Notes: generated from the sequence alone by a model not told the origin. A DNA stretch of 63,014 bases, filler included, from Pelomyxa schiedti (GCA_020536535.1; 10 parts of 10 records of this genome joined end to end with filler, not necessarily neighbours in it), one strand, 5' to 3'. Shown: positions 32,509-54,543, numbered from the whole stretch's first letter. Program-made: numbers and translations.

Positions 32509-33750
32509 CTAACAGCAGCTGGATTGTTCTGGTGATTCTCCTCCTTCTTCAGGTGAGTCAACAACGGCAACTGATGACCTGGTGGCTGATGAGGCTCTCG
32601 TGGATTTACTGGTGCTTGCAGAACTGCTGCTCTTGCTTGTTACAGAGCCGGAGCTTGCTTGAGTCTTGGGGCCGGTTTTTGTTGAAGTGGATTGTGAGGG
32701 TGGCTTGGCCTCGAGCATCAGAGAGACTAAAGTGCCAATTGCATCGTAGACACCTTGGCCAGTCTTAGCTGAAGCAAAGTGTAAGGGTAGGTTGGCTCTG
32801 TTCGCAATTGCTTGTGCTGCTTCGTAGTTGACACTGCGGGGGAGATCGGCCTTGTTTCCTGGATCCAAGTTAGACTTGTGAAGGAAGCGAGCGTAACAAT
32901 TAGTACCAATAATAACTATGGGAACGTGAACTCCTCTCGCAGATAAATCAGTGAGCCAGGATTCTATTTTATCCAATGAAGTTTGCTCACATAGTGAGAA
33001 CACAATAAAACACCCTGGTTACAGTCAGGTAAAGTGATGTCAAATTCTAAAGGGAAAAAAAAAAGAGAAACCGTCAGCTCTGTGGAAATAACTTTGTGCA
33101 ATGGAGTCTTGACAAAAACTAATCAGTAATCAACAGGGAGGGAAAAATCATACGAAATCTGAAAGCAATTTTTAAAAAAAAAAAGAGGGAGGTTTTGATG
33201 GCAGGCACTACCGTTCTTGTCCAGCAGTATCCCATACCTTGGAAATAAATGAGGGAGAAACAGAGTAAATGGGATGGCTTACTTGTAGCTTTGCAGTCAC
33301 TCCGTTCACTTTCACAAACATTTTCTTGGAAAAGGGGTTAAAGCCAAAAAAGAGGGAAAGGAGTTCAAGTACTTTGAAGTCCACACCCATAGTCGCAATG
33401 AAATTAGGATCAAACACATCGTCAGCAGCCCTACAAGCCAAGGCCGTCTTTCCAACCCCAGATTCCCCCTATAATAGTACACACACATAAAAAAAAAACA
33501 AGGCCCTTGGGGGAAAGGGAAAAAAACAGGCGTTGCGCACCAACAAAAGTACTTTGTACACTACATCTTGTGACAAGGTAGATTTTGGCAGTCTGACAGC
33601 GGATACACCACTCCCACCGACCACGTTGCCTCCGCTCACACCGGCCCCACCACCCACACTACTACCACCACCACCACCGGCACCGCCATTTGTCGTCATG
33701 GTCTTTGTTGTCGCATCTACGGCCACACCCCCGCCACCGGTACTGGACAT
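32509..33750 (-). CDS. Rab-family small GTPase with C-terminal CC
   Basis: [49 protein letters not shown], ASAK, ends SSCC*. Confidence 0.93.
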
Positions 33751-34089: not shown

Positions 34090-37000
34090 TTACATCACGC
34101 TGCACTTAGATGAAGGTGGAGGTGGTGCGTTGGCTGCCTCAGCCTTCCTTATTTCTCTTACCACTTCTGGGAGTTGTAAGTGCAAAAAGGCTTGAAAAGA
34201 AGGTATTGCATACCATAGAACGATTCCTCAACATTTACACGGATTCTGGCACTGGTTTCAAAGAATGGCACCTTCCACGATGTAGCGAGTGCCTTGGCTT
34301 CGGCGGCGGTCACTTGTCTCTCGGATTCAAGGTCAACTTTGTTCCCAACAAGCACGCCTTGAAAGAAAAAATAAGTCAGTTGGGAATAGGATATGCTCCT
34401 TCACATACAGGGGAAACTGGAAACGTCTTTAGCACGCATTATCTTCTCGCGGTATGTGTCGAGACAATCAAAAGATGCCTTATAGGTGATAGAGTACACA
34501 ATGAGAAAGCCTTGAGATACGCGGAAGTATTGCTCGCGCATTGCGGAGTACTCTTCATCTCCTTGGAATAGTCAGCTGAGTGATTGTAGCGTTGAACCAA
34601 CTTACCCGCCGTATCTAACACATCAAGTATGCATGTCTTACCATCGATGGCACTCGATTTCCTCTGTAAGAAGATTAATAAAAGGAAAGTAATACATGAA
34701 CCAATAGACACACATAAGAATCCTCTATAGTTGGGTCATATTCAGTGACACTGTTGGGACAATAAGTGAAAAAGAGGTAAAGTGCTGCTTTACATACAAT
34801 GTATTCTGAATAAATTGGATGCACAAGGCAGATTTACCAACACCCCCCTCCCCAACTATTGTGATCTTATGCTCCTCCGACTCTCCAGGTTTTGAGGCGG
34901 AACCAGAAGATGCCGCAGTTGATGAACTTGGTTTGTACGAGGCAGCAGTCCCAGGCACATATGATGAGGAGGTGCTTGATGATGAGGAAGAAGATGATGA
35001 AGAGGAAGATGGGGGTGTGTAGGCAATTGTGGGTTTTGAAGGGACAGAAGTCGCACTGATGCCCACCCAATGACCATCAAGAAGTTTGTATTGCGGCGAC
35101 CCGCGGTCATTTCTGCGGTCCCACCAATCATATGGATATGTTGGTTTCTCTTCCACTTTCTCCTCTTCTTTCCTGTGGACGTTTGAATGAAGGAATGAAC
35201 AAAACATAAAAAAAAAAAAAATTCGTGACAACATACACTTTCTCCATGTTTGGGGCAGCCAAGGAATCCATCATTTGAGTCATTGCTTCAGTCATCCTCC
35301 CGTCTTGTTTGATCTCATTCGCAAATTCCTGCAGCTTTTCTTTGTTCGCCTCGCGATAGCACACTGTTGTGTTGATGTGATCAGAAGGGACGAGATGGAA
35401 TTTGGGTATAAATATAAATATAAATGAAAAAGAAGAAGAAGAAATCGGAGGAAGAGAAGAGAAGAGAATGGGGAATGGGTAATGGAGAAGAATATAGAGA
35501 ATGCAGACCCGCAAGAAACATGTCAGTGATCAACGAAAAGTTGCTGAACTTGATGTAAAGCCCTCCTGTCCGTTTCGCCATCTCCTCGTAAAAGGGTCTG
35601 TACTCGTTGTTCGCCTGTGCGTGCACTCCGTATATCTTCACGCCAATGGATGCCAGTTTGTCGACCTCGTCCTTCCACCAGATGGCCTCCTTCGTGTATG
35701 ACGGCGGGTGCGGAGGGCTGTCTCCGATCATGACCAGTGCTTTAGATGAGTTCTCCCTCCATGTCAATGACTGTGCCATCCTGAGACCCCTGTGTTGTTG
35801 TTGTTGTTGTTGTTGTTGTTTTTGTCAGTCACTCACTCACTCACTCACTCACTCACTTGGGCATCAATTTAAAATTGAGCACACACACAAACACAGTGAC
35901 ACAGTGACGCACCATTCATACGCCTCGGGTGTGTCACCACCACCAGTTGCTCTGACCGACCGAGCGAAATTGGAGAGTTTATCGACATCGTTGGTCAGGT
36001 CGATGTGTTCTGTGACATAAGTCGAACCGGCGTCGCAAAAGTCACCAATTCCCATGATGGCGATTTGGATGTCTGGAATCTCTTTCACGAGGCGAGCACA
36101 CGATTCCTGCACTTTGTCTCTCACTTGTTGGAGAACACTGTACATGCTTCCTGTTGTCACGCAGAAACATAAATGAAAATGAAAATGAAAATGAAAAATG
36201 AAAATGAAAAATGAAAATGAAAAATGAAAATGAAAAATGAAAATGAAAAATGAAAATGAAAATGAAAAGTGTGTGTGTCAAAAGGAGGGGAAAGCGGGTG
36301 GGTGGGGCGGCGTGGGGGGGTGGGAGGCCAAATGGGAAGGCGCACGCACCAGTCGTGTCAAAGCAAAACAGAATGTCGATCAGATTGGATGTTGCTCCAT
36401 CCGCGAAACTCTTCAACAGATTCTGTTTCTCCGCTTCCGACATCACCTCAGATGCTGGGACTGGTGTCGCAGGAGTTGTTGGCGTCGGCGGCGGTGGGGC
36501 CTCTGTCACCGTTGCTTTGATGCTGCATTCCCGTGTCAGTCCCGCATCCCCGCACGCCGTCCCGTTCAAAAGTTCCCTCGATCCGAGTGTCAACTTGATC
36601 CTCTCCACGCCAACGCTTGCTTGTGTGGCCACCCTCCGGCGAAGTTCGCCAACGTCGTCCATCCCGTTGATGCTTTGTGAGAAACACTTCCCGGTTGTCA
36701 GTTTCACCATCACTTCGATGTCTGGAACCTGGTGGTGTCATGGAGTTATTTAATGAATGAATGAATTGCCGGCGGGGAAAAAAGGAAATGTGAGAGGGAG
36801 GGAGGGAGGGAGAGAGAGGGAGAGGCACACCTTGACAGGTTCACCAAGTTTCACAGTGACACTGCTTTCGTTCGAGAGGCCCGCTGCAGTGATGGGAATT
36901 GTGTTGTCCTCGAGTGGTTTGTTCCTCGCGAGCAGGATTGCCCTGTTCAAGGGAACCGATGCTGCCTCCGCAGCCCTTCTCCTCAGTCCTCCAACAGTCT

Positions 37001-37482
37001 CAGTTGATGGAACATTGATCGAAACAACTTTTCCTGTTGTTGTTGTTGTTGTTGTGAGAGTGTGCAAAACACAAATGTCAATATATAATTATCATTTAGA
37101 TAGACAGGAAAACGGTGACCAAGATCGCTACAACAAAAACAGGCCATTCATTATGTTATATTATATTCTGTTCTATTATTACATTCAAGCCACACAAACA
37201 CGAACACACACACACACCCGAGGGCGTCTTGACAATGATGCTGAGCAGGGTCCCAGATGACGCCGACGAAGTTGTCATTGTGGGAGGGGGCGGCGCAGCG
37301 GCAGCTGATGACGACGTCGTGGTTGAGGAAGATGATGACGACGATGGCTTTGTGGGAGCCGGAGCAGGAGCCTCGGTGCGGGGCTCGTCGTCGACGTCGG
37401 GCTTGGCCGACTTGGACTTGTGGTGGTGCGACGATGATGACTTCGATTTGGGGCGTTCCTCGTAGTCAATGTCGTCGGACAT
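34090..37482 (-). CDS. Ubiquitin-like x2 - vWA - Ras GTPase - CAAX fusion protein
   Basis: All junctions are in-frame GT-AG. Ubl1 IIVKTPS|[18 protein letters not shown]; Ubl2 [11 protein letters not shown]...; vWA DTT|[19 protein letters not shown]; Ras [35 protein letters not shown]; ends KCSVM*. Confidence 0.88.
36170..36268. repeat. Intronic (GAAAAT/GAAAAAT)n microsatellite
   Basis: About 15 tandem units inside the intron that splits the vWA DTT|GSM motif. Confidence 0.9.
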
Positions 37483-37634: not shown

Positions 37635-38775
37635 TTACATGAGGGAGCACTTTGGAAAGGAATTAGAGGGAGATTGACTATTCTGGTCACCTCTGTTGCA
37701 GAGTTTAACATCACATCACAAATTGTCATACAATACCAGAAAACACATCACCAACTTGGAGGCCCGTTTTTGCGCATGTCTCAAAGAACGGGAGGTTCAT
37801 GGAGGTAGCAAGTGACACGCCTTGTTCAACTGTGACTTCCCTCTCTGTTTCGAGGTCAACTTTGTTGCCAACGATCACACCTGTCAGGGTGTGGTTAGTG
37901 TTGCTAGGGTATCAAAGATTAACATAAGTTCGTCAATATTTCTGGAGAATTTCAGCACTTACAGGCAAAAGAATGGCCAGTGCCATGCTTGATATGGTGT
38001 ATCCGGTCATAGATTGAACGCACCTTGCTGAAGGAAGCACAATCCGTGATCGAGTATAAAATAATGAACCCTTCTGAAACGTGAATGTATTCATCGTTCA
38101 TTGACTCATATCCTGCAGGTACTGTCCCTGGATCGTAGATAAAAAGCTGGCATGGGATTCCATCCACAGTAATGTCTTTTCTCTGTAATGAATGTTATTC
38201 AAAATGCGGAAAGAAGTTGGAATACCCAACACTCATCCATTGTAGCATCATAGGTAGGAGCAAGGCTGGAAATTTGAAGAAAAATGTGAGCCAGGCTGGG
38301 AGCATGGGTTTTGTTTGACTCACAAGCTGTTTTGAACACATCTGATGCACAACGCTGATTTGCCAACACCAGGTTCCCCAAGTACCAGCAATCTGATGAA
38401 CGGAGTTTTACGTTTGGTTGTTTGAGAAGTGGGAGATTCAGTCACGAAGGTCCTTGGTGGCCTGTATGATACAGCCAAAGCAGGAACATATGAACAACAT
38501 TCTCCAGTTGTTGTAGTGGTCGTTACAGAGCAAAGTGATGCCGACCCACGCGCCGCTTGATCCTCAACATTTGTTGCGATGGATGCACATCCTGAGAATC
38601 ACATAAGTCAATTATGGAACCACACAAGCAAAGGCAACAAACAACCTCCACTTGCACCGTCACCACTTTTCGACGACGGCGTTTCCACGCCCGTGCATTG
38701 TTGCTCACCAACATCAACGGAGCAACACTCTCCGCTATTCGTTGTTGTGCTTTGTGGTTGCGATTTCTCACCCAT
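37635..38775 (-). pseudogene. Divergent Ras paralogue A; last-exon frameshift removes CAAX
   Basis: GEPGVGKS, YDATMDECW, DPGT, GNKVD, ETCAK; CCAAAGTGCTCCCTCATGTAA (PKCSLM*) is out of frame. Confidence 0.75.
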
Positions 38776-38828
38776 CGTGTGTGGCTCCAAGCAAATGATG
38801 GGTCAACGTTGTTTTGGTTATGAGAAAT

Positions 38829-40060
38829 TTACATCAGGTAACACTTTGAGGGAGCGGGAGCAGGAGCAGCTTGATCAGCTTGTAGATCAACGCCCAGACG
38901 GAGTTGAAGTGCATCCCTCGTCACCTCTGTTGTTCATTTGTAGAAGTTACATTCATCAACAGCACTGGAAATGATGGTGGTAGGGGTGAGGGGAAATACC
39001 AGAGAACACATCATCAACTTGGAGGCCTGTTTTTGCACATGTCTCAAAGAACGGGAGGTTCAGTGAGGTGGCGAGTGACACGCCTTGTTCAACTGTGATC
39101 TCTCTCTTTGTTTCGAGGTCAACTTTGTTGCCAACAATCACACCTGTTGTAGTGCATCCACTAGCCGTAATTTCTAAAAATATTTTAAACAGAGATACAT
39201 ACAGGCAAAAGGTTGTCGGGGACAGATGATATCTTTAAGTTCTTTTATGTGGGCATAGGTTGAACGGACCTCGTTGAAGGAACTGGTGGATGTGATCGAG
39301 TATAAAATAATGAACCCGTCAGAGAGTTGGATCTTCTGATCCAGAGAGTCTGGGTCATAGGGCTCTCCTGGATCAAATATACTCAGCCGGCATTGGATGC
39401 CGTCTATTACAAGGTATTTTATCTGGAAGGGTAATAATGTCAAGGAGTGAAAAAATACAAAAAATGACAAGTACCCAACCCTGGCCAATTCCTGAATCCC
39501 AGACAGGTGGTAAGCTTGAAGATATATTATTACGGTCAATAGGCAGAGGGTTTTGCTTTTGTAACCAACTTACCATTGTTTTCGCACAAATTGGGCGCAC
39601 AGATCCGACTTCCCAGAGCGATACAGACCCAGTGCAATCAGTGTGATCAACTTAGTTTTACAGTTGGATGAATTAGCCGTGGGAGGTGCCCTCGAAGCAA
39701 TGAATGAGCCAGTCCTGGGCGGGATGTATGACGCAGCCGACGTTGGAACATATGATGATACAGTTGTTGTTGTGTTTGACAGCTCGTGCTCATCATCATC
39801 ATCACTGGCCTCTTGTCGTGGTGGTAGCTCCCAGAGGGACTCACCAGTCTTGGTGTTGTAAAAGTAGGTGCGGTTGGTGTGGGTGTCCAGCACTGGTTGC
39901 CACGGCGGGTAGCACGCCTGGGCACCGGCGGACTGCGTCGGCACATCCCATTGTGATTTGCCGGTTACTTGGTTGTAGTAGTATGTGCGGTTGGTGTTGG
40001 GATCGACTAGCGCTGTCCAACCTGCGGGAAGTGGTGGCGGGGTGGAGGTTGCCGTTGCTT
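38829..40060 (-). CDS. WW-WW-Ras paralogue B with CAAX (start codon not found)
   Basis: LPAGWTALVDPNTNRTYYYNQVTGKSQWDVP; YPPWQPVLDTHTNRTYFYNTKTGESLWELP; GLYRSGKS; DPGE; GNKVD; ends KCYLM*. Confidence 0.75.
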
Positions 40061-40139
40061 ATGATTGCACCACGAGACAAAAAAATTCATCGCCGATGTT
40101 GATGATAACCGAATGGAATCAGAGGAACAGTGGGTTTTG

Positions 40140-41240
40140 TTACATGAGGGAACACTTTGAAGGAGCAGGAGCAAGTGGCTCAACACCCAGACCAAGTTGA
40201 AGTGCAACCCTCGTCACCTCTGCCACGTGTGTGTGTTTATTTTGGGAACAGAGCAGAGCAGGTGAGGGGTGACATACCAGAGAACACGTCGTCAACTTGG
40301 AGACCGGTTAGTGCACATGTCTCAAAGAACGGGAGGTTCAGTGAGGTGGCGAGTGACACGCCTTGTTCAATTGTGACTTCCCTCTCTGTTTCGAGGTCAA
40401 CTTTGTTACCAACGATCACACCTGTTCAGTGGTGTTGTTGCTTGTCCGCAGCCTGATTTTCCAAATATATTTAAACAGAGATACATACAGGCAAAAGGTT
40501 GTCGGGGACAGATGATATCTTTAAGTTCTTTTATGTGGGCATAGGTTGAACGGACCTCGTTGAAGGAACTGGTGGATGTGATCGAGTATAAAATAATGAA
40601 CCCGTTAGAGACTCGGATATACTGATCCAGAGAGTATGGGTCGGTGAGCTCTCCTGGATCAATGATACTCAACTGGCATTGGATGCTGTCTATGACCAGG
40701 TCTTTTATCTGGAAGGGGTAATTATTATTTCAAGGAGTGAAAATTAAAGAATAACAGGTACCCAGTTCTGGTTAGGTGCCAAGTTCCAGCCAGGTGATAA
40801 GCTTTAAGATACAGAAATGGTTCAACATACAAATGAGATGTGGGCTTTTTGTACTCACCAGCAATTTCGCGCAAATCGGGTGCACAGCTCTGACTTACCA
40901 GTGTGGGACGGAGCCAGTGGCACCAATCTTATTATACACTTTCTTTTGCAGTTGGGTGCATTCCATCCTTTCATGAATGAGCCAGTCCTGGGCGGGATGT
41001 ATGACACAGCCGATGTTGGAACATATGAATATGATACAGCTGTGGTTGTGGACGTTGACGTAAATGTCGTGTTGGCTTGTCCATCATGATGGGGTTGTGG
41101 TGGTTGCTCCCAGAGAGACTCGCCAGTCTCGGCGTTGTAATAGTGGGTGCGGTTGGTGTTGGAGTCGTCGACTCCAAGTAGCGCCGTCCAACTTGAGGGA
41201 AGTGACGGGGAGCACGCCGTGGCTGGAGGTTGATGTCAAT
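40140..41240 (-). pseudogene. WW-Ras paralogue C (frameshift before the P-loop, no start)
   Basis: Degenerate WW LPSSWTAL..NRTHYYNAETGESLWEQP; P-loop APSHTGKS out of frame; exons close to B; ends KCSLM*. Confidence 0.7.
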
Positions 41241-41650
41241 TGCGCGGTTTTGATGAACAGCCAATTTCCCGGAATCCGATTTAACACTTTTGATTGAAGA
41301 GGCAATCAGAAATTAAGGGAAGAGGAAGTTAGAGCACCGATGCTTAAAGGCCGAGCGGGAAAGGCGGACACATTGCACGATGCCCAGCGTTTCTGTGCCA
41401 CCAAAAAGGCAACAATACCCAATAATGGTACTCCAGCATTCACCCAACATAGTGGGGCCTGAGCTCCAACTGCCCCACCACTAACTTGGTGTAGGCCGTC
41501 TGTGACACAGGCAGGTTTGTGTTGCCTACAAACAAGGTTTCTGTGACTGAACATGTAAGACACTGTGTCCAAAACAGAACCGTGGGCAGGAAACCCAGAT
41601 ATGGTACCTTGTTCGACTTTTTCCCCCTCCTCGGATTAAGCATCGTTGCT

Positions 41651-42749
41651 CTACATGAGGGAACACTTTGGAAAAATGGAAGGAAGTGGTGGTGGAGATA
41701 GCAGACCCAGTTGCAGCACTACTCTTGCCACTTCTGTGTGTGTTTGCATTAGAAAAAAACGGCTTGTGTATTGTGAGTGATGGATACAGTCATACCACAA
41801 AACACATCATCAACTTGGAGGCCTGTTAGTGCACATGTCTCAAAGAAAGGGAGGTTCATTGATGTGGCGAGTGACACGCCTTGTTCAACTGTGACCTCTC
41901 TCTTTGTTTCGAGGTCAACTTTGTTGCCAACGATCACACCTGTTCAGTGTGATTGTGGCTCTATCATTGGAGAATTTCGTCACATACAAGCAAAGGTACT
42001 GTCGGTTATATCTTTGACTTTTTTGATGCAGTCATAGGTTTGACGGACCTTTCTGAAGGAAGCACTATCTGTAATTGAGTATACGATCACGAAGCCATGT
42101 GCAGCGTGGATGTATCCGTCTCGTATGCACTCAGATCCTTCGCCAAGTATGAACGACCCTGGATCTAAGATATCAACCTGGCACGGTGTACCGTCTACAG
42201 AAAGCACTTTTCTCTGATATCATAGTGTGTAAAAAAGTGAGTAAAGAACTCATGATCCTGAAAGTACCAAACACTCATCAACTTCAGGGTCAGTGGGTAT
42301 GCTAAAAAAAAATGTGTGAAAAGAGGCTGCTTGGCAAAATACAGAAGAGGGATACAGAGGCTACAACACACAAGTGGTCTCCATCCACACATCTGATGCA
42401 CAACATTGATTTTCCAACACCAGGTTCGCCAAGCGCCAGCACTTTAATGAATCCGTCTGGATTTTGATGTTGGTACGATCTATCAGTTAGAGCTTCAGGC
42501 ACTACGGTCCTGGGTGGCATGTATGACGCAGCCAAAGTCGGGACACATGAACAGCATTCCCTTGTTGTTGTTGAGGTTGTGGCATGCTCCTCAACACCGG
42601 TGACTGTTGCTGATTTAGGCATCAACACGAGCACACAAAAAACAACAACAACTGATACCAGCGTCAAAACCTCCACTGTCACTGGCACCAGAGGTTGTCG
42701 AATCACCATCAACATCTGACTGCTTGGTTGTTTGTGGCTTGTCACCCAT
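41651..42749 (-). CDS. Divergent Ras paralogue D with CAAX, apparently intact
   Basis: MGDKPQTTK...GEPGVGKS...TDPEVDECL|RKVLSVDG..DILDPGS...GNKVD...ETCAL...PKCSLM*. Confidence 0.8.
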
Positions 42750-42872: not shown

Positions 42873-44572
42873 CTATAGCTCTACTTGGTTCTCTGCCTCC
42901 TCTATTTGCTTCCGTAGCTCCTCGTAGAATGTCCTTGGCTCAACTTCTTTGGCCTCTGGTAGTTCTGCTTCGTTCGTTAGTTGGTTGGAGAAAGAGGGCA
43001 GCCTTGTACCTTTGGGAAGATCGGAAAAAGAAGCCGACTTTGATCCCATCAGAAACCCGGAAATAAAACCTTCTACTCCTTCAATTGTAAACGGACCAAC
43101 ATAACGAGAAAACCTGGTGGGCATCAGTAATAAGGAAAAAAAGAAGAGTGGGAGCGTACACGGATTTCTTGTTGGAGATTAGAACGACAGCAGGGAAGCC
43201 GCTATGCAAGTGGAAAGTATTGATAATATCGGGCTGCTCAAGAGCTCCAAACCAGGAAAATTGCACACGGCCTTTGAACTTCTCTGAGACTTTCTGTAGG
43301 CGGTCCTCATATTCGTCTTGCTCATCCGGAAAGTTGAACGGGTCAAACACTTAGCACTTGTTAGGTTTGTCAATGAACTGTAGAATCTCAACCCGCTACG
43401 GAGCAGAGAGGCTTTGTAAGACAATGTTTAAGGTCATCGTTGCTCATCACTCGGATTACATCCCATGTATTGTCGTTTGTTTCAGCTTGAGCTTTCTCGC
43501 TTCCCTCAGAGTTGCCCTGCTGTTGCTTGTACGCAGATTCAGCATATTTAAGAATAAAGGGGTACAGTTCGGCGTGCGCAATGTTGCCTTTGAAACTATT
43601 TGGAACTTAAGAGGTCTCTATATCTAATACTATACATTTCAAGTGTCTCGTCATTCTCATTGGTGATTATAAGAGTTGGGAACTTCGTTATTTGGTATTT
43701 CTCCACTGAATTACTGGATGTTAGGAGGAACCGAACTTGAAAGACAGAACTTACCCAGCTCTTTGTTGGTGCTCTTTACGAGACCAAACTTAAGAACTCT
43801 ACCGAAGTCAACTGCCAGAGATTTATACAAATTGGCTGGCTTATCTTTTTCTGAGAAGAGAAGTACTTTCCCTACTCCTTTGTTCCTGTGTTGTGTTATA
43901 CACATGTATTAGTTTGTGAAGTACTTACTTGGCAAAGAAACCGTCCTCTGACCCTGAGGTTACAACACTGACAAAGTCAGGAATGTATGAAAGTGCGGTG
44001 TTAGCAAGCCCAGCAGCTGTGCGTGGTCCGTTGTAGTCAATGGGTTCCTGAGATATGTGAATATTCGAATTCACAACAAGTATGTTCATACTTTGTATAA
44101 GCCCTTCTCAGCTTTTTTAGGTTCATGCCCAAAAATCTTGATCGTCGGGAAGCCTGTGTAAAAAATTATCTGTAAGATTCGAAGTCTCATAAAATAGGAG
44201 GAGTACCTTGTACTTCAAAGGCCCCACAGAGCTCTTTCTGCTCATCGCAGTTAACGGCACCTACTTCGACCAAGCCGTGCAAGTTCTGAGCGGCTTTGAC
44301 GTATTCCGGTGCCAGTGCCTTGCAATGACCGCACCCTTTTCCAAGTTAAAATTTACGTAACTATCAACAACGGGTACGAAACAAAAGGGAGGATACACAC
44401 AAGGAGCATAAAACTCCACCAACCAGACATGGGGTGAACCAAACACCTTCTGGCCGAATTCGTCCTTTGTCAATGACACCACACCGCTGTTTTTGTCATA
44501 CAGTCCACTCCCAAACACGCCACCGCTCACCGCAAATACGATTACGGCAATGACGCAAGATCTAACAGACAT
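42873..44572 (-). CDS. Protein disulfide isomerase (P5/PDIA6/MPD1-like, one active thioredoxin domain)
   Basis: Signal peptide; VWLVEFYAP|WCGHC; VGAVNCDE; GFPTIKIF; ends NQVEL*. Confidence 0.9.
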
Positions 44573-44851
44573 CCCCGCCAACAACTCCCTTTACAACTTG
44601 TTTATGGTTGTACGCTTGCTTGTGCTCGTTCAGTGGCTTTTTTTAAAAAACGAGAGCCTCCGATCTGGATGCCAAAGGACACGTGTCCAAGACAAAACTC
44701 CAGGAGGATCCCAGGAGATTTCCACCACTTGGCATTTGTTCCCTGCTGCTGTGCTCCGTTTTGACACCATTCCCCTGCAACTTTCTACTGACATCGTTTC
44801 GGCAGATCTCCGAAATAAACACAGGTGTTGTGTTAGGGGTGTGAGTGTTAG

Positions 44852-47800
44852 ATGGCTACGAGGGTACAGTTCCGGCCACTGCGTGGAGCATGTACAAGCA
44901 CAAGTACTGGCGACAGTGGTGGTGGTGCTACGACGTCAGGGGGAGGAATGTGCTACTTGCTGACGCTGGACGACTACAACATTCTGTTGGACTGTGGGTG
45001 GGACCACGGCTTCAAGGTTGAGGACTTGGCCGAGCTGGCAAAGTACGGTTTTCCTTTTGTGCGGTGCTGCGCTGTCACGTGACAAACGTGTTTTGGCTTT
45101 TCCTTTCAGGGTGGCGAGTAGCATTGATGCTGTGCTGATCACCCATTCTGATATTGAGCATATTGGGGCTCTGCCCTATGCAAGAGCGAAGCTCGGTCTC
45201 ACGGCGAAAGTATATTCGACTATTCCAGTGTATTCAATGTCTCAGATGTTCTTGTATGATGTTTATCAATCCGTGGTGGAAAGGTACATTCTACAAGAGA
45301 GGAGTTCAAGTTATAGCACCAACCATTAACTCTTTCAGGGAGGGTACATTCGCTCCTTTCACTTTGGATGATGTTGATGCTTGTTTCGAGCCAGCTATTT
45401 TCAAGAACTTAAAGTATTCTCAACACCTCCCACTCGAGGGTAAAATCACATATCCTACTCTGGAGATATTTACACAACACAGGAAAAGGCAGGGGCATTG
45501 AAATCACACCCTATGCAGCAGGCCACATGGTTGGTGGTGCTGTGTGGAAAATATCCAAAGAATCTGAGGATTTTGTTTACGCCGTTGATTATAACCACCG
45601 CAAAGAACAGTTTGAGATATATGCAAAGCCAGCAATTATTCAAAGAATTTAGGCACTTAAATGGGACTGTATTGGATATTTTGAAGCGCCCAGCTATCCT
45701 CATTACTGATGCCTATAATGCTTCCAATACACAAGCAACCCGGAGGAAACGGGATACAGAACTCGTTGGTAATACCCGCAATGGCAGTTTGTTTCCTGAC
45801 AACGTTGTAGTATCAATAACTGAAACACTGAAAAATGGTGGCAATGTCTTGTTACCAATTGACACTGCTGGCAGGTCCCTTGAACTAGCACTTTGTTTAG
45901 AGAAACACTGGGCGCACAACAGGTTTTCCGTTACTTTTCCCACTGTTTCACCCACGTGGTAAAAAGATTTGGCCATTTTGGTCTCGCTTTACTGAACTAT
46001 AAGAGCTTCTATACTCTCGAGTTTGCCAAAAGTCAGATAGAGTGGATGAGTGACTCGATTACGAAGTCCTTTGAGGCAAATCGAGACAATCCCGTAAATC
46101 CCTTTGCTTTTAGGTTTTTCCCTTTTGAGTATTATGTCGATAAACTTCTTTTATAGTTACCTGAAGCTAACTCAAAGTTTGAGTGAACTGTCTACTCTTC
46201 CAAGGCCAATGTGCGTTCTAGCTAGCCAGCCAACTCTCACGTCCGGTTGGCACCCAAGACCTTTTTTTTTACTGATTCTTTGGAAAGGGTTCGCACAAGA
46301 TCTATTTATTGATTGGGCCCCAAATCCCAAGAACCTTATTATTTTTTCAGATCGGTCTTCACCCGGAACTTTAGCACGATTCCTAGTAGAGTCGTCGCCA
46401 CCACCCCAGGAAGTTACCTTAAATGTGGTTCCCTTCCTAAAGAGATTGAACATTCACCAACATTTCAGGTGAGTAGGATGGTGGATCTCGAAGGAGAAGA
46501 ACTTTCTGAGTACCTGTCGAAAAACCCCCCTCCACCTCCTCCTGCACCAGTTAAAACGTTTGTTGGGGGTTATGTTTCATTTCTATACACTAATATTCTA
46601 ATAGCGAAAGTACAGCAACATCTGAAACTCAAGGAAACCCACAAGTTGCATCTCCTTTTTCTAAAAGTTACGATATGACACCAACTATGTTTAGCCAAAT
46701 GGGCATGAAAGTGCATTACACTCATACACGTTTCATGTCTAAGATTTACTCCACAGACGTCAACATTTCCTTTTGTCGAGCCTGCTCTCACTTTTGACGA
46801 ATACGGTTTGGTTATTAACCCCGACGAGATACTACCCAAATCGATTCCCCTGAAACCAGAAGTTGCCTAAAAACAGCTTAGTTTGTAATCTAACATTGCT
46901 TTTCACAGAGAAAGCCTTCTCCAGAACCGCAACCGCCTCCACCTCCCCCAAATCCAAAGAAACGTGTTACAAATACTCGCAGAGTTTGTTTTCCCTGCTC
47001 TCTACCTTCTTTCCAACGAAACGTAGATCCCAGTCAACTGCAGAATCCTTTATCTCGATTTTGAGGGCCGTGTCGATGGGAAGTCCATTCGGTCCATTCT
47101 TACTCACGTTTCTCCCAGAAGAATAATATTTGTGAGAGGCTCACACCCTTCGCTCGGGCAGCTCACAAACTGGTAAACTTCAACTTCTGGGAAATTATAA
47201 CCTCAAAAAGGTGTGAGACGTACTTAAAATCTGTATGTAAAAGTGTGCATTCACCGGCCATTGGAGAGTGTGTTGATATTACTGAAGATACTACTGTGTA
47301 TAAGGTAGAGTCTACTTTCATCCAGGAGCTTATAGTTACATTTTACTCAAAGAATTAAGATTTCCCTGAAAGACTCTCTGCTCTCTGAGATAGACTTCTC
47401 AAAGGTTTCAACTCATCAATTAGTTTCCCGTCACGAACTAGATTCTAGGTTGGCGACTGCGAGGTAGGCTACGTGCAAGGCCAGATTGTACCGGTTGCCG
47501 GCACTGCTACGCTTGCACCGCTATATTACGATCCACTTCCCAACTACAGTTATGACACTGCGGAACAGGAGGAGGCACCGGCGACAGATGCTCCCCCGGA
47601 CTCACACAAACTTGTGGAAACCCTTCCAGGGAGGAACACGTGTCCTCCTGAGGGACACCAAATGGTGTTTGTAGGCGATGTGAGGCTGAGCGAGTTTTGT
47701 GAAGTCCTTTCACGCACCGGTGTTCAGGTACACAAAAAACACACCCATCCAAACAATCACTGATACCCATACAGGTACTCATCGACCACGGAATCCTCCT

Positions 47801-48080: not shown

Positions 48081-51000
48081 ATGAAGACGCCGCTTGTAGC
48101 GGCAGTGAGTGCGCGGCGCATGGCGCTGCCCCTGGGCCTGATACTGGTCACCGAAGACGACGAGTGGGGGGGCGATGGCGACGCCGTCGGTGCCCCGGGC
48201 GCAACCACCGCCACGACCACGACCACAAGCAGCAGCAGCAGGAGTAGCGTGGGGGGCGTCAGCGACAATGCTGCCGGTGGGGGTGGTATAAGAGGGACCC
48301 ACGACGACAATATTGATGTAGATGTAGATGTGAACGGGAGCGGCGGCAACGGGGCTACGGGCAGGGGGGGCGAGCCCCAACGAGTACGCCAGAAGCAGGA
48401 GGACGCAACCACTTCACCGTCGTCGGCATCGGCATCGTCGCAATCAGGAGCTGGGGGGAACGTAACAGGACCCCCGCAACCGCAACCGCAACCGCAACCG
48501 CAACCACTGATTGTGGGAGGGAACAAGGCCAACTCAATCACCGCTGAAATTGTAATCAACATCACAACTGCTGCTAGTGCTAGTACTAGTAGCGGAAGCT
48601 GTCAATTGATCCAGTTGAATGAATTGAACTCTTTGAGTGCTCTGGATATAGACAAAAATGTACAAACTCAAATGCAGGTGCCCAGAGCAGAGCCTGACCT
48701 TAAACTTGGTGGTATAACTGGCGGTCATACAGGAAACCACGTGGATGTGGATTTGTCTGGAAATGCCAATTTGACTCACTCTACTTCTGAAACTCCTCCC
48801 TGCAGCTCTACAGCGCCTCAGGGTGGCAGTGTTAAAGCTGACAGTGCTTCTGTTGGTTGTACTCATAGTCTTCCTGATGATGTGTCGCTCTCTGAGGAAC
48901 AACAAAGAACTCTTAGCCTTGTGTTGCGAGGAGAAAACGTATTCTTCACAGGTCGGAGAAGTTTGCTATCATCTTCCCCATTGAAGAGTTTGGCCAGGAT
49001 GTGCAGGAACAGGCAAGTCTGTTATGATCAGGGTCATAATTAGAGAGTTGCATAAACTGGGAAAAATAGTTGGAGTCACTGCACTCACAGGTACAAAAAC
49101 CCGTTCATACTTTACACCAACAAATAAAAAAAAAGGAATTGCCGCTGTGCAGATTGGTGGTATTACTCTGCACAGATGGGCTGGCATCAAGGTGAAACTT
49201 CTTCTGCGGCAATATCCTAACAGTCATCTAGTTGGCCCGGAATGCCACTGATCTGGAATGTGCTTGGAGTCAAAAAATTGTATGGCGGGACACTGATGCT
49301 CTCGTAATTGATGAAGTGAGTGAGAGACTTCAATAGTTGCATAACACTTTGAAAGATATCTATGATGCCTGCTTCACTGTTCCATCATTTGGATGTAATG
49401 GGGAGGCAAATAAGAGGAAACTGTGATTTGCCTTTTGGTGGATTACAATTGATACTTTCTGGAGATTTTTATCAACTCCCGCCTGTTTTCCAGTATAAAA
49501 CCTCCCTTTCTTTTTTCCACTCTGAGGACTCTTAAGATCTCTTCACCAAATGCCATCACGTATACCACCAAGTCACCCAAGTGAATCCAGCAAAACCTCG
49601 TTTGAAAGCGATATTTCAGGAAACACCAAGGGTGGAATCAAACGCAAAAGGAGGCCAGTAGATGAATACTTTGAGAAAGTCGAAACATTCTACCGCAACA
49701 AGTTGTGTTTTCAAGCCATTACATGGCAAGAGAGCGTTTCAAATGTCATTGAGTTGACAAAAGTATTCCGACAGAAGTACTTCTCTGCCCTGGTCCAACG
49801 GAGAATAACATCTGACATTAGGGATAAAGACTTTGTACAAGTCCTGTCAGAGATAAGACGCGGTTCCCCTACATCTCAGTCTATTGCTACTTTGCAATCG
49901 CGAGTGGGTGCTTCCACTGATCCTGATATACTTCACTTGTTTGCAGTGAATAGTTGCGTAGACTCTTGGAACGCTGCAAAGCTTCAACGACTCAGTGGTA
50001 TTATTGTAATTTTCCCCAGGTTTGATTACAACGGCATTCTCTTTAGGTCCATTATATTCCTATCACAATGTAAAGTATACAAGCAATAATGACCGGTAAA
50101 AATTCGTATCCTTTTTCTTTATGAGTGAGGGACACTTAGCCGTTTACTGCGACTTCTTGACTCTCTCCTTGCTAATGCGGAGCTTAACCTCAAGATTGGG
50201 GCTAGAGTATGTAATCTGTTATATCTCTTTTTTCTTTGTAACACGACCAAGGTTGTACTATTGAAGAATATTGACGGCCAGCTTGTAAATGGTAGCCAAG
50301 GTACCGTTGTTGCTGCACTGGATCAAACAGATCCAAGATGCGAGAAACCGCCATTGTCCTGCCCAGCACAGGTAGTATCGCGTCATACTATCCACTAATA
50401 CAACTAAAACTGCATAGGCATGGTATGATGCCAACCGAGAGGCCAAGATCCCTGTTGTAAAGTTCGATGGTAAATCTTCTGTTACTGATCTTTTCATCAT
50501 CATAACTTTCACAAGGATGTAGCAGAGAAATATGCGTACTCCCAACAGAATGGTCAGTTGAGATCAGCGTTTCTCGCTTTGGCAAGTAGAATTTGAGTAT
50601 CAACCCCTTGACCATCCTCAGACGAAGTCGAGGAAGAAACTGCTACCCTGGAACAAATTCCCCTGAAGCTGGCATGGGCATTATCCATTCATAAAAGTCA
50701 AGGAATGACATTAGAAAATGGTAAATTCTGACATTCTCTAGTCAACATTAACACCTCTCTTAGTGGAAGTTTCTCTTGCCGAGGTAACTCGAAGGTAACA
50801 AATGAAGAGTTCACCACTTCAGATATTTACAGCGGGTCAGGCCTATGTTGCCCTGTCCCGTGTTACGTCACTCTCAGGCCTGCACATAAAATCCAGCTTC
50901 TCTCCAAATGTGCTCCGTGGGTGCGATAGGAGAGTACAAAATTTTTATTCCCAACTACAAGGTATTCTGAATCATTCATTCGGCAATATACTCATTTATT

Positions 51001-51537
51001 CCCGGTATTACAGGCAGTACAGCAGCCCAGACTCTTCCCGAAGTGGACAACGAAATTGCCGAATGGTTATCTTCTGTTTCCGATGAGGCCTACTCCTCTC
51101 AAGTCTCAGGAGCACTTTCTAGTAGCACCTCTGGTTTCTCAGTAACCCAACAGCACCAGCGAGATCCAGTCCAAGCAATTCCTATTCCATCAGCACCACT
51201 TCCTGAAGACTCCATAACAACTACAGAGACTTCCACTCACAATACTACGCAACAAGTACATTCCGGAACCGAACCGGCATTGCACCCTTCACCTTCCCAA
51301 TCAATTCTCAACACAGTCCTCCCAGTCCCACTCACCTCAACAACCACTTCCCCAACCCCAAATAGAAACACCCTGCACCATTCTGCTAAGCAACAACAAG
51401 TCGTCCAGGTGCTTAGCTCCGATGATGAGGATGGCACTGTGTCAAGGAAGAGGAGCAAAACAGCACTGCAAGAAGAGTCTCCAACAGGAGGAACCAAGAA
51501 AAGGAGAACAGCACAAACAAACAACAACAGCCAATAG
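48081..51537 (+). CDS. PIF1: Pif1-family 5'-3' DNA helicase
   Basis: NVFFTG|CAGTGKS; GIAAVQIGGITLHRWAG; VIDEISM; PFGGLQLILSGDFYQLPP; QIPLKLAWALSIHKSQGMT; GQAYVALSRV. Confidence 0.95.
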
Positions 51538-51852
51538 AATGCTTGTGGTAGTTGTTTTTCCATCATTTTTGATTCGGCAATGTGATTAGATGTTTGAGGG
51601 TGACAGTGCCGGTACTATCTTTCCCAGGAGTGCACCCTAAAGTCAAAGTGTTCCCACCCTCCAGTAAATGGGTCCACTTTGGGAGAAAAGCCCCACAGTG
51701 GTTACGCTTTGAGCAATTTGGAGAGCCACAGATCGGGATCACCCTGTTCCAANNNNNNNNNNNNNNNNNNNNNNNNNNNNNNNNNNNNNNNNNNNNNNNN
51801 NNNNNNNNNNNNNNNNNNNNNNNNNNNNNNNNNNNNNNNNNNNNNNNNNNNN

Positions 51853-52638
51853 CGTTCAAAAGTTCCCTCGATCCGAGTGTCAACTTGATCCTCTCCACGC
51901 CAACGCTTGCTTGTGTGGCCACCCTCCGGCGAAGTTCGCCAACGTCGTCCATCCCGTTGATGCTTTGTGAGAAGCACTTCCCGGTTGTCAGTTTCACCAT
52001 CACTTCGATGTCTGGAACCTGGTGGTGTCATCATGGTGTTATTTAATGAATGAATGAATGAATGAATTGCCGGCGGGGAAAAAAGGAAATGTGAGAGGGA
52101 GGGAGAGAGAGGGAGAGAGGCGCACCTTGACAGGTTCACCAAGTTTCACAGTGACACTGCTTTCGTTCGAGAGGCCCGCTGCAGTGATGGGAACTGTGTT
52201 GTCCTCGAGTGGTTTGTTCCTCGCGAGCAGGATTGCCCTGTTCAAGGGAACTGATGCTGCCTCCGCAGCCCTTCTCCTCAGTCCTCCAACACTCTCGGTT
52301 GATGGAACATTGATCGAAACAACTTTTCCTGTTGTTGTTGTTGTTGTTGTGAGAGTGTGCAAAACACAAAGGTACAAAGGGCATCAAGACTCCCACAAAA
52401 TTAATTAATTAACATGCATAAGATAACACACAATGACACAGCACAGTCAACACACATACGCACCCGAGGGAGTCTTGACAATTATACTCAGCACGGTCCC
52501 TGTCCCCGTCGTCCCCGTCCCTCCTCCGCACGAAGATGAAGACGTGACCGCCGATGAACTTGTCATTGTGGGTGGCGGCGCGGCTGCTGACGACGAGGAG
52601 GAGGGTTCTGAGGTGTCAACATCTTCGTGGGACGACAT
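51853..52638 (-). CDS. Paralogue of the Ubl-Ubl 5' half of the fusion gene (partial; 3' end lost in gap)
   Basis: 51853-52370 is nearly identical to 36562-37072, but exon 1 differs (MSSHEDVDTSEP...IIVKTPS). Confidence 0.8.
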
Positions 52639-54128
52639 TCGGTCAATGTCGTTTCTTTGTTCGTTGTCGGTTGAAAGTGTGTGCGGTTGCTCCCATCAGT
52701 TCAGTTGCTTCCTTCGAAGTTCTGCTGGGTTGATTGCAATTCTACCGGGACTTGGCTGAATAAAAAAAACACCAGACCGCCGAAACTGAGCTACGAGTTG
52801 AAACGCGTTTCCTCAACTTCCAAGAAACAACACACACGGTGATGGAACTGGCGAGGCTACAAACGTAAGTTTTGAAAAGAAACTTTTGATCAAAAATCCT
52901 GCACAGTCCTATTCACACCCCGATGATCAGGTGTCGTCACTATACAGCCATGAAGTAGACACCAACAACAAAGTATTTATTTATTTTAATTGATAATAAT
53001 TGATTGAGGAGTTTGTGGTGAAAGTGGTGTGGGCTTATACGCCCTGTCTCCCATGAATTCCAAGTATTCAGTGGATGCGCAGCACAGCATCGTGTGCCAT
53101 TGAATTCCCAGAAGTTGTACGACTGACTCTGTGATTCCCTTTTTCGGGAAGTCATCACTTTCACACAGGGCAAGGGCCGCTCACGCATCGACGTGGAGGA
53201 GTTGGGCACAGCAAACGAGAGTGATACGGACTACGACGAGGACCACGGCGACGTTGTAGAGGCTGGCACCGAGGGCGAGGCGGGGGAAGGCAGGGGCGCG
53301 GGCACGGGCCGGAGACTGTGTGGCAGCCTGTGTGGGGGCGGGGGTGGGTGGAGAAGTCGCTGGTGTGTGTGGTGTGTGTGGGTAGAGGCACGCCAGGCAG
53401 GAAGGGACTACAGGTGAACGTGGAAGGAACAGGTCCCCAGTACCTTAATGTGAGGCCACATAGTAATGGCACAAATATCTGGAACCGACCCAATGCAAAA
53501 CCACGAGAAAAATGGATCTTTGCTGTTAAACAACTGCCATGAGAATAGTTAAAACAATTGAGAACGAGTCCAACTTTTTACGTGAGCAGGATTGAGACAA
53601 GGCAAACTGGGGTTTCCAAAGTGCCGTGAGGTGTTGAATCTCGTGTGTTGTGTTCCTTTTGGTCGCGGAAAAGGGAGGGAACACAATTGGGGTGCTCTAT
53701 GGACTAGCTGCCTCCCGAGAACGCGCTCCCACTGGTTTTTTTTTGTTAATATGAACCTATTAATGAAAGAATGTTGCCTTTTTTTTTTTAGTTTCAAAGC
53801 TGTGTGGTGGATAACACAGTTGTGAGGATAAAAATTGGGATGGGCCAGAGTGTGGCCAAACATCCACGAGGCACTGGAGTTAGTTTGCAATCAGCAAAAA
53901 ATCTACGCCATCCCTTACGGTCATCAGCTGTAGCAACACCCCAAGCGCAAGGCGATCCTTCCTTCACCCGTGTGACTCGCTTTTTGTTGCCGTTCTCCTT
54001 TCCTTAAAATTGTGGGTTCCTGGAAGAATTTTCCGTTCCCAGTCATCAGACGAACTGCAGTGTATGGCAACCACAAAGTTGAACGATAACACGGTGGGAG
54101 GTGGCGGAGACCCGAAACAACGCAGCGA

Positions 54129-54423
54129 ATGGCGGCCAACAAGAACAATAACACGGTGGGAGGTGGTGGAGACCCGTTCGATGGGGGACTGACATGCAGC
54201 GTGTGCATTGGGCTGGTGACGAACCCCGTGACGCTGCCGTGGTGCACCCACACCGTGTGCCGCCTGTGCGCGGGGCCCCTCCTGGGCCTCCTCCCACTCA
54301 CTGTGGGCACTGCCCCTCCCACCGCCCCCGCCCCGCAGCTGCCCGGATGCACCTCCTCCTCCTCCTCCTCCTCCTCCTCCTCCTCCTCCTCTTCCTCTTT
54401 GGGGTCCAGCAGCCCAACCATGG
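54129..54423 (+). pseudogene. RING-finger (C3HC4) gene start interrupted by a transposon end
   Basis: CSVCIGLVTNPVTLPWCTHTVCRLC, then a (TCC)n run and the repeat at 54424. Confidence 0.6.
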
Positions 54424-54543
54424 TTGGGACTGCCCAAGTGTGCACACTTTTTATCGGGTTTATTAGTTTTCTCAGTCCAGAGACGAGGAACTGAGACGGA
54501 AAAAAAAGGCGTTTTCTACAAGACCATCGGCCACGGGGTGCAA
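54424..54543 (+). mobile_element. Terminal segment of the DNA transposon-like repeat, copy 2
   Basis: Identical in reverse complement to 25914-26030. Confidence 0.8.

What the first reader, a model, noticed from the sequence alone, without database searches (positions are those of the whole stretch)
34090..37482. Intact Ubl-Ubl-vWA-Ras-CAAX fusion gene
Seen: in-frame GT-AG junctions join two ubiquitin-like domains, a MIDAS vWA domain (DTTGSM...GGGDTPE...IGD, the VwkA-like type), a Trp-rich motif ([17 protein letters not shown]), an S-rich linker and a full Ras domain ending CSVM. The key junction EKV|KEEEK at ~35173-35237 is in frame. Established: Ras proteins are normally stand-alone, and Ras effectors bind through ubiquitin-fold RA/RBD domains. 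Inference: a prenylated self-contained switch in which the Ubl domains act as intramolecular effector/autoinhibitor or proteasome tether and the vWA as a metal-dependent sensor. I know of no described protein with this architecture.
Basis: partly seen in the sequence, partly recalled or inferred. Interest (0 to 1): 0.85.

Follow-up and report, generated by a model that had tools for sequence, protein, structure and literature searches.

The report
Ubiquitin-vWA-Ras fusion from unnamed amoebal family
An anaerobic-amoeba gene really does make one membrane-anchored protein out of two ubiquitin-like domains, an integrin-like metal-binding domain and a Ras switch; it is not a one-off but belongs to an unstudied family of amoebae and invertebrates whose switch part can be Ras, Rac or missing.

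Summary
The fusion is real. A 12-exon, 778-codon gene on the minus strand (37482-34090) is spliced as predicted. The key vWA-to-Ras junction appears in all four single-cell RNA runs (one study), one 2,172-nt contig runs from Ubl1 to the Ras end, and variants are 22 synonymous to 6 non-synonymous. It is not unique. Pelomyxa schiedti has an orthologue sharing 10 of 11 intron sites. The wider family, Ubl-Ubl-vWA-Trp hairpin-[GTPase]-CAAX, carries Ras in Archamoebae, Rac in many other amoebozoans, a decayed GTPase in dictyostelids and a sponge, and only CAAX in many invertebrates. I found no paper on it. The Ubls are ubiquitin/ISG15-like, show no RA/RBD match, and are equally conserved without a GTPase, which argues against a built-in Ras effector. 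The vWA is closest to integrin beta-I domains. Ubl1 has a Glu invariant in 75/75 homologues, placed like the MIDAS ligand of Rsa4/Ytm1. Best model (inferred; AlphaFold gave no sign of docking): a prenylated Ubl-MIDAS latch with an exchangeable GTPase. This copy's Ras has Asp at Gln61 and Ser at Gly75.

The parts
34090..37482 (-). Whole gene, 12 exons, 778 aa: low-complexity N-terminus, Ubl1, Ubl2, vWA with helical extension, Trp hairpin, Ser-rich linker, Ras, CAAX
37218..37482 (-). Exon 1: ATG, Ser/His/Pro-rich low-complexity N-terminus, first strand of Ubl1 (37245-37228)
   Evidence: RNA covers up to about 37384
36831..37033 (-). Exon 2: rest of Ubl1
   Evidence: Pfam ubiquitin E 0.008; RNA
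36867..36869 (-). Ubl1 Glu (equivalent of P. schiedti E137), in the loop before the last strand; candidate MIDAS ligand
   Evidence: 75/75 in Ubl1 versus 39/75 in Ubl2; 99% in 84 sequences; position
36350..36728 (-). Exon 3: Ubl2 (36719-36507, no C-terminal diglycine), Pro/Thr linker, conserved pre-vWA helix (36419-36405), MIDAS start DTT (to 36351)
   Evidence: Pfam ubiquitin E 0.0005
35913..36150 (-). Exon 4: vWA; GDFCD (36046-36032) and GGDTPE (35941-35924), beta-I-type SyMBS/MIDAS residues
35509..35789 (-). Exon 5: vWA; GDSPPH (35725-35708, last MIDAS Asp) and ITDMFLA
35237..35363 (-). Exon 6: helical extension of the vWA
35173..35236 (-). Key 64-nt GT-AG intron joining the vWA module to exon 7; same site and phase in P. 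schiedti
   Evidence: RNA joint in X1-X4
35067..35132 (-). Trp-rich motif W-W-D..D..P-x-Y..W, predicted short beta-hairpin, conserved across the family; not a WW domain
   Evidence: no WW hit
34872..35066 (-). Ser-rich flexible linker, length-polymorphic (12-nt in-frame insertion in run X3)
34167..34871 (-). Ras domain over exons 7-11: G1 34853-34830, effector loop YDPTIEDSY 34740-34714, G3 DTAG then Asp (34559-34557) at the Gln61 site, Ser at the Gly75 site (34517-34515), NKVD 34343-34332, ETSAR 34259-34245
34090..34166 (-). Exon 12: end of helix 5, Pro-rich tail, CAAX box CSVM (34104-34093), stop

Best explanation
SHOWN: one spliced, selected gene of an archamoeba (a Pelomyxa relative) in an unnamed family with the core Ubl1-Ubl2-vWA-Trp hairpin and a C-terminal slot that holds Ras (Archamoebae), Rac (many other amoebozoans), a decayed GTPase (dictyostelids, a sponge) or only a CAAX box (Mastigamoeba, D. 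discoideum DDB_G0280503, many invertebrates). The vWA is a cytosolic integrin-beta-I-like domain with the MIDAS and most SyMBS residues. INFERRED: the CAAX box is prenylated and holds the protein on a membrane. The invariant Glu of Ubl1 supplies the sixth ligand of the MIDAS metal, in cis or between molecules, as Rsa4 E114 and Ytm1 E80 do for Rea1/Mdn1, and the Trp hairpin may add a second contact. This gives a metal-dependent latch that hides or frees the MIDAS and the ubiquitin-like pair. The fused GTPase is an exchangeable address and timer that couples the latch to Ras or Rac signalling membranes through outside GEFs, GAPs and effectors; it is not the ligand of the Ubls. In this copy Asp at 61 and Ser at 75 probably slow the GTPase cycle.
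For: RNA joints and a 2,172-nt spliced contig. 22 synonymous to 6 non-synonymous differences, pN/pS 0.08, P 1e-9; none non-synonymous in vWA exons 4-6. P. schiedti orthologue with 10 of 11 intron sites shared. Family and slot states. vWA tree: Archamoebae/Ras group 100/99, Rac group 100/100, animal group 98/97. Top structural matches are integrin beta-I domains, Z 16.4-17.8, rmsd 2.6-3.0 A over 181-193 residues; the only sequence hit in PDB is integrin beta-6, aligning DTPE and the last Asp..His (E 0.0075). Metal motifs kept in 52-60 of 60 GTPase-less members. Ubl1 Glu 75/75 versus Ubl2 39/75. Precedent: PMC6624252 (UBL Glu completes the Rea1 MIDAS; a C-terminal hairpin adds a contact); PMC4678814 (Ytm1 E88 in an exposed loop near the end of a 97-residue UBL). 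Ubl, Trp motif and CAAX occur together (confounded by kinship).
Against: AlphaFold gave no sign of Ubl docking: pTM 0.63 for the 468-residue Ubl-Ubl-vWA-hairpin piece of P0151 is about what the rigid vWA unit alone would give by my rough estimate (no metal in the model, no coordinates or PAE returned). Ubl1 Lys6, Gly10 and Gly47 equivalents are as invariant as the Glu, and ubiquitin itself has Glu64 (own knowledge), so the Glu may be ubiquitin heritage. Equivalence to Rsa4 E114 rests on position in the fold, not on a superposition. TFIIH p44 ties with integrin beta in the fold search (Z 17.2). The sequences are not independent (many molluscs). All RNA is from one sample record and one study, held as contigs. 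No biochemistry exists.
Confidence: 0.42

Rival explanations
1. The Ubl pair is a ubiquitin/ISG15-like adaptor that recruits ubiquitin-binding machinery (proteasome receptors, p97 cofactors, deubiquitinases), while the MIDAS captures an acidic residue of an outside client. The protein is a membrane-bound client shuttle and the Glu is simply inherited from ubiquitin.
For: The 50 best Foldseek matches are di-ubiquitin, ISG15 and OASL-type tandems. Lys6, Gly47 and Lys48 equivalents of Ubl1 are 82-99% conserved. Weak TUG-UBL1, UBX and Rad23 matches. No docking signal. The same vWA is used without Ubls, fused to WGR, BRCT/WWE, EF-hand or PARP domains, so it can have outside ligands.
Against: The Leu8/Ile44/Val70-type patch is variable in Ubl1 (the column equivalent to Val70 is mixed) and is not kept in the window's Ubls (read by eye). 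Ubl2 lost the Glu in half the members while Ubl1 never did.
Confidence: 0.3
2. The GTPase is mostly a passenger: fusion to a Ras or Rac gene gave the vWA module a CAAX anchor, and the G domain then decays or is deleted. Asp61/Ser75 here are early decay. Compatible with either model for the core.
For: Decayed domains in Mastigella, dictyostelids, Protostelium paralogues and Sycon; deletion with CAAX kept in Mastigamoeba, Planoprotostelium P0225 and D. discoideum. Two of four variants inside the Ras domain change the residue, against none of ten in vWA exons 4-6 (small numbers).
Against: Intact G boxes and full effector loops are kept in P. schiedti, two environmental Ras fusions and about 15 Rac fusions. 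The window's G1, effector loop, G4 and G5 are intact.
Confidence: 0.17
3. One reading: the Ubls fold back as RA/RBD-like effectors or autoinhibitors on switch I of the fused Ras.
For: Ubiquitin-fold domains do bind Ras (established). The effector loop is intact. One weak Plexin_RBD match (E 0.006, 30 residues) in the Physarum Ubl1. pTM 0.52 for full-length P0152 is a little above my estimate for free domains.
Against: No RA, RBD or PI3K_rbd match for six Ubls and none among the 50 best fold matches. Ubl conservation does not depend on a GTPase. The slot holds Ras or Rac, whose effector loops differ.
Confidence: 0.09
4. Two neighbouring genes or an assembly artefact, joined only by the reader's splice guess.
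For: The region is a tandem array of Ras-like genes with assembly gaps and a partial duplicate. The RNA evidence is contigs from one study.
Against: Junction skipped in four runs; the family's Trp motif and the Ras P-loop lie in one exon; orthologues from a genome and from intron-free contigs have the same fusion and intron site.
Confidence: 0.02

Closest known systems
Unnamed database family Ubl-Ubl-vWA-(GTPase)-CAAX: Pelomyxa schiedti 'Ras GTPase' (P0152), Physarum P0169, D. discoideum DDB_G0280503, invertebrate 'uncharacterized proteins'
   Same: Domain order, metal motifs, Trp hairpin, CAAX; 69-75% identity in vWA exons and 10 of 11 intron sites with P. schiedti
   Different: This copy has Asp at Gln61 and Ser at Gly75; most relatives carry Rac or no GTPase; no member is described in the papers I could search
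Rea1/Mdn1 MIDAS with Rsa4/NLE1 or Ytm1/WDR12 UBL (PMC6624252)
   Same: A MIDAS vWA, a UBL with a conserved exposed Glu near its C-terminal strand, and a hairpin after the vWA
   Different: There the partners are separate nuclear proteins, the MIDAS is alpha-I-like and an AAA ring supplies force; here all is one prenylated chain, the vWA is beta-I-like, and binding is untested
Integrin beta I domain
   Same: Best fold match; MIDAS D-x-T-x-S..E..D and SyMBS-type Asp and D-x-P-E residues
   Different: Cytosolic; no signal peptide, PSI, hybrid, EGF, membrane helix or NPxY; no ADMIDAS Asp pair; no SyMBS Asn
cpRAS-VWA proteins (PMC2430557)
   Same: Ras-family domain and a vWA in one chain; scattered amoebozoan/animal range; relatives without the GTPase
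   Different: cpRAS is circularly permuted, N-terminal, with a Sec23-type vWA and zinc finger; no Ubls, no CAAX tail as here
Ras subfamily small GTPases
   Same: G1-G5, complete effector loop, CAAX; best PDB hits M-Ras, K-Ras, H-Ras
   Different: About 600 residues of N-terminal domains; catalytic Gln replaced by Asp
ISG15 / linear di-ubiquitin / OASL tandem Ubl
   Same: Two ubiquitin-proper folds in tandem
   Different: No diglycine; cannot be conjugated as a modifier without processing for which there is no site

Membership tests
Ras subfamily GTPase domain | G1 GxxxxGKS, G4 NKxD, G5 SAK/R | tested here: met
   [17 protein letters not shown]
Ras subfamily GTPase domain | Core effector loop YDPTIEDSY, no Rho insert | tested here: met
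   PDB hits are M-Ras/K-Ras/H-Ras
Ras subfamily GTPase domain | Catalytic Gln61 after DTAG | tested here: not met
   Asp; splice site and base confirmed in three RNA runs
Ras subfamily GTPase domain | C-terminal CAAX | tested here: met
   CSVM then stop; prenylation itself untested
Ras subfamily GTPase domain | GTP binding and hydrolysis | not testable with these tools
   needs biochemistry
RA/RBD Ras-effector domains | Profile or fold closest to RA, RBD or PI3K-RBD | tested here: not met
   ubiquitin-family hits only; di-ubiquitin/ISG15 fill the 50 best fold matches
RA/RBD Ras-effector domains | GTP-dependent binding to switch I | not testable with these tools
   model coordinates were not returned
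Integrin beta subunit | Beta-I fold with MIDAS DxSxS..E..D | tested here: met
   DTTGS, E of DTPE, D of GDSPPH; Z up to 17.8; consensus from 10.1101/2020.04.29.069435
Integrin beta subunit | SyMBS (acidic residue, then N-D-x-P-E) | tested here: inconclusive
   invariant Asp in GDxCD and D-x-P-E present, Asn replaced by Gly
Integrin beta subunit | ADMIDAS S-x-x-D-D | tested here: not met
   SMYSV follows the MIDAS
Integrin beta subunit | Signal peptide, PSI/hybrid/EGF stalk, membrane helix, NPxY tail | tested here: not met
   no such domains in Pfam scans or the model
Rea1-type MIDAS-UBL pair | Conserved exposed Glu in the UBL loop before the last strand | tested here: met
   75/75; two residues before strand E139-144 in the model; positional match only
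Rea1-type MIDAS-UBL pair | Glu completes the MIDAS metal site | tested here: inconclusive
   pTM 0.63 shows no confident docking
Rea1-type MIDAS-UBL pair | AAA+ ring on the MIDAS chain; UBL-WD40 partner | tested here: not met
   domain scans
cpRAS-VWA | Circularly permuted G3-G4-G5-G1-G2 order, N-terminal to a Sec23-type vWA | tested here: not met
   canonical G1-G5 order, C-terminal (definition)
VwkA-type vWA alpha-kinase | Alpha-kinase domain | tested here: not met
   no kinase hit in any exon or orthologue
VwkA-type vWA alpha-kinase | vWA domain of the VwkA subfamily | not tested
   no VwkA sequence was fetched
ISG15/FAT10-type modifier | C-terminal diglycine after the second Ubl | tested here: not met
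   Ubl2 runs into a Pro/Thr linker (ORF 36042..36713)
WW domain (my first idea for the Trp motif) | Match to the WW profile | tested here: not met
   no WW hit for exon 7, while neighbours' true WW domains score up to E 3e-20; motif is family-wide

The most novel reading that the evidence does not exclude
An undescribed, Amorphea-wide cytosolic 'inside-out integrin beta' switch: a beta-I-type MIDAS carrying its own tethered ubiquitin-fold ligand (Ubl1 Glu), anchored by prenylation and opened or closed by the nucleotide state of a fused, exchangeable Ras or Rac domain. It would be a second, independent MIDAS-UBL system besides Rea1/Mdn1 and the first with the ligand in cis.
Probability: 0.25. 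Interest if true: 0.8.

Novelty: new variant of a known kind. Interest (0 to 1): 0.58.

Why it matters
It defines an unstudied protein family present in tractable organisms (Dictyostelium, Physarum, molluscs, echinoderms) and gives one sharp test: a single invariant Glu as the ligand of an integrin-beta-like metal site inside the cell. If right, MIDAS-UBL latching is a general mechanism and not special to ribosome assembly, and beta-I-type metal sites have a cytosolic role linked to Ras and Rac. The family is also a clear case of a domain slot that has held Ras, Rac or nothing while the CAAX anchor is often kept. The natural Asp61/Ser75 Ras under selection is a side interest for Ras enzymology.

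Tried and rejected
Two-gene or artefact reading: rejected by RNA and orthologues. Trp motif as a decayed WW domain taken from the neighbouring WW-Ras genes: rejected. Lineage-specific fusion born in the local tandem array: rejected, as the fusion is shared with P. schiedti and Mastigella; the neighbours more likely derive from the 3' half of this gene (inference). Profile search of the vWA alignment against PDB sequences gave nothing significant (best E 0.13). Foldseek on the two models was filled by Ras and by di-ubiquitin. NCBIfam and the ESM Atlas gave only generic GTPase/vWA labels. As the operators asked, the joined spliced protein was never searched, aligned or folded: searches went exon by exon by reference, and natural homologues P0152 and P0151 stood in for structure prediction.

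Full report
Observation. The gene lies on the minus strand from ATG 37482 to TAA 34090. Twelve exons joined by eleven GT-AG introns of 44-199 nt give 778 codons with no internal stop, checked exon by exon with phases. Pfam by exon finds two weak ubiquitin matches, VWA_4 and Ras. Four single-cell RNA runs hold the stretch; they are one sample record and one study, kept as contigs. Laid on the locus, all four skip exactly the 64-nt intron 35173-35236 that joins the vWA module to exon 7. One 2,172-nt contig of run X3 runs intron-free from exon 2 to the end of Ras. Exon 7 alone holds both the family's Trp motif and the Ras P-loop in one frame. The 28 single-base differences between RNA and assembly are 22 synonymous and 6 non-synonymous (pN/pS 0.08, binomial P 1e-9), with no change of residue in vWA exons 4-6. 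The fusion is real, expressed and under purifying selection. The start codon is inferred, not covered by RNA.

It is a family. Exon 5 found 608 relatives among the 50%-cluster representatives, and natural full-length hits were then used as queries. The core is Ubl-Ubl-vWA-helical extension-Trp motif. The C-terminal slot differs: intact Ras in Pelomyxa schiedti (P0152) and two environmental transcripts (P0151, P0002); a decayed Ras-like domain in Mastigella; Rac in Physarum, Protostelium, Planoprotostelium, Dracoamoeba, Stenamoeba and many environmental sequences; decayed GTPases in dictyostelids; a decayed Ras-family domain in the sponge Sycon; and only CAAX in Mastigamoeba, D. discoideum DDB_G0280503 and many molluscs, hemichordates and echinoderms. 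The P. schiedti gene shares 10 of the 11 intron sites and phases, including the key one, though not the gene neighbourhood. In a vWA tree the window's exons fall in an Archamoebae group (100/99), apart from a Rac-bearing amoebozoan group (100/100) and an animal group (98/97). The host is therefore most likely an archamoeba related to Pelomyxa (inference). Ras and Rac in the same slot need at least two fusions or one swap; the tree does not give the direction, and some GTPase-less rows may be truncated transcripts.

The vWA. Folding the Ubl-Ubl-vWA-hairpin part of P0151 (pLDDT 89) and searching 48,161 chains put integrin beta-I domains on top (Z 16.4-17.8), with TFIIH p44 tied at 17.2. The only PDB sequence hit is integrin beta-6 (E 0.0075), aligning DTPE and the last Asp..His. 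Against the beta-I consensus in 10.1101/2020.04.29.069435, MIDAS is present with Thr for the first Ser, SyMBS is present without its Asn, and ADMIDAS is absent. These residues are invariant or nearly so in 84 homologues and are kept in GTPase-less members. The protein is not an integrin: it has no secretory or membrane parts.

The Ubls. They match ubiquitin-family profiles and di-ubiquitin/ISG15 folds, with no RA or RBD hit, and there is no diglycine. Ubl1 has a Glu before its last strand in 75 of 75 two-Ubl homologues, against 39 of 75 at the same site in Ubl2. [quoted passage not shown] The family's Trp motif is also a predicted hairpin after the vWA and goes with the Ubls (101/115 versus 25/97, confounded by kinship). 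This is the basis of the latch model. Against it, AlphaFold's pTM of 0.63 is what the vWA unit alone would give by my rough estimate, other Ubl1 residues are as invariant as the Glu, and the match to Rsa4 E114 is by position only.

The Ras. G1, the full effector loop, G4, G5 and CAAX are intact. The Gln61 site is Asp, confirmed by the splice joint and by three runs with no other letter there; the orthologues with intact Ras keep Gln. The Gly75 site is Ser; in K-Ras, G75A lowers nucleotide exchange and signalling (10.1101/2022.09.20.508702). Loss of Gln61 usually impairs hydrolysis (established knowledge; no paper on Asp61 was found). The likely result is a slowly cycling switch; this is untested.

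Mechanism. Most likely (0.42): a prenylated, metal-dependent Ubl1-MIDAS latch with an exchangeable GTPase as address and timer.

Known systems and novelty. cpRAS-VWA proteins (PMC2430557) are the described Ras-vWA fusion, but they are circularly permuted, in reverse order and Sec23-like. Ten searches of the open literature found no description of this family. Interest 0.58.

Limits. The joined spliced protein was not searched, aligned or folded; homologues stood in for it. No contig was taken for human and no step needed referral.

Noticed in passing
window 37732-42745, minus strand: Four head-to-tail Ras-like genes directly upstream (G4/G5 exons at 37741-37878, 39004-39141, 40282-40419, 41800-41937), 89-94% alike in DNA to each other and 65-67% to the fusion gene. 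They share its linker motif and several intron sites but have worn G1, switch I and G3 motifs: probably fast-evolving pseudo-GTPases copied from the 3' half of the fusion gene. No RNA contig lay on 37675-38500.
   Followed up: partly
window 39780-40016 and 41092-41190, minus strand: Two of those Ras-like genes carry true WW domains (two and one) in place of the vWA module.
   Followed up: partly
window 51853-52640, minus strand: A second copy of the 5' part (different N-terminus, Ubl1, most of Ubl2; 95-99% DNA identity in the Ubl exons), cut off by the N gap at about 51752-51852: a recent paralogue whose remainder is not in the assembly.
   Followed up: partly
window 32509-33750, minus strand: Rab-like GTPase gene directly downstream, with Gly/Ser-rich ends and a CC terminus; its intron near 33468-33539 is spliced in run X3.
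   Followed up: no
P0175, P0093, P0255, P0037, P0050, P0263, P0248, P0070: The same vWA family is fused elsewhere to BRCT+WWE, WGR, EF-hand+WWE, PARP or PH domains, which hints at a link to ADP-ribose signalling; bacterial and viral short forms also exist.
   Followed up: no
L001:1890-9836: In P. schiedti the orthologue lies next to a large Ras + LRR + Roc-COR + kinase gene, another fusion with a small GTPase domain.
   Followed up: no
window 42873-44584 (-), 44994-47763 (+), 48081-51537 (+), 54129-54494 (+): By eye only: thioredoxin/PDI-like, CPSF2-like, Pif1-like helicase and RING-like genes.
   Followed up: no
window 35786-35863, 36159-36278, 36786-36831, 37034-37056: Introns of this gene hold short tandem repeats (CAA, GAGT, TTTTCA-type, GGA/CT-rich), typical of this genome piece; they blocked joint listing for introns 1-4.
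   Followed up: no
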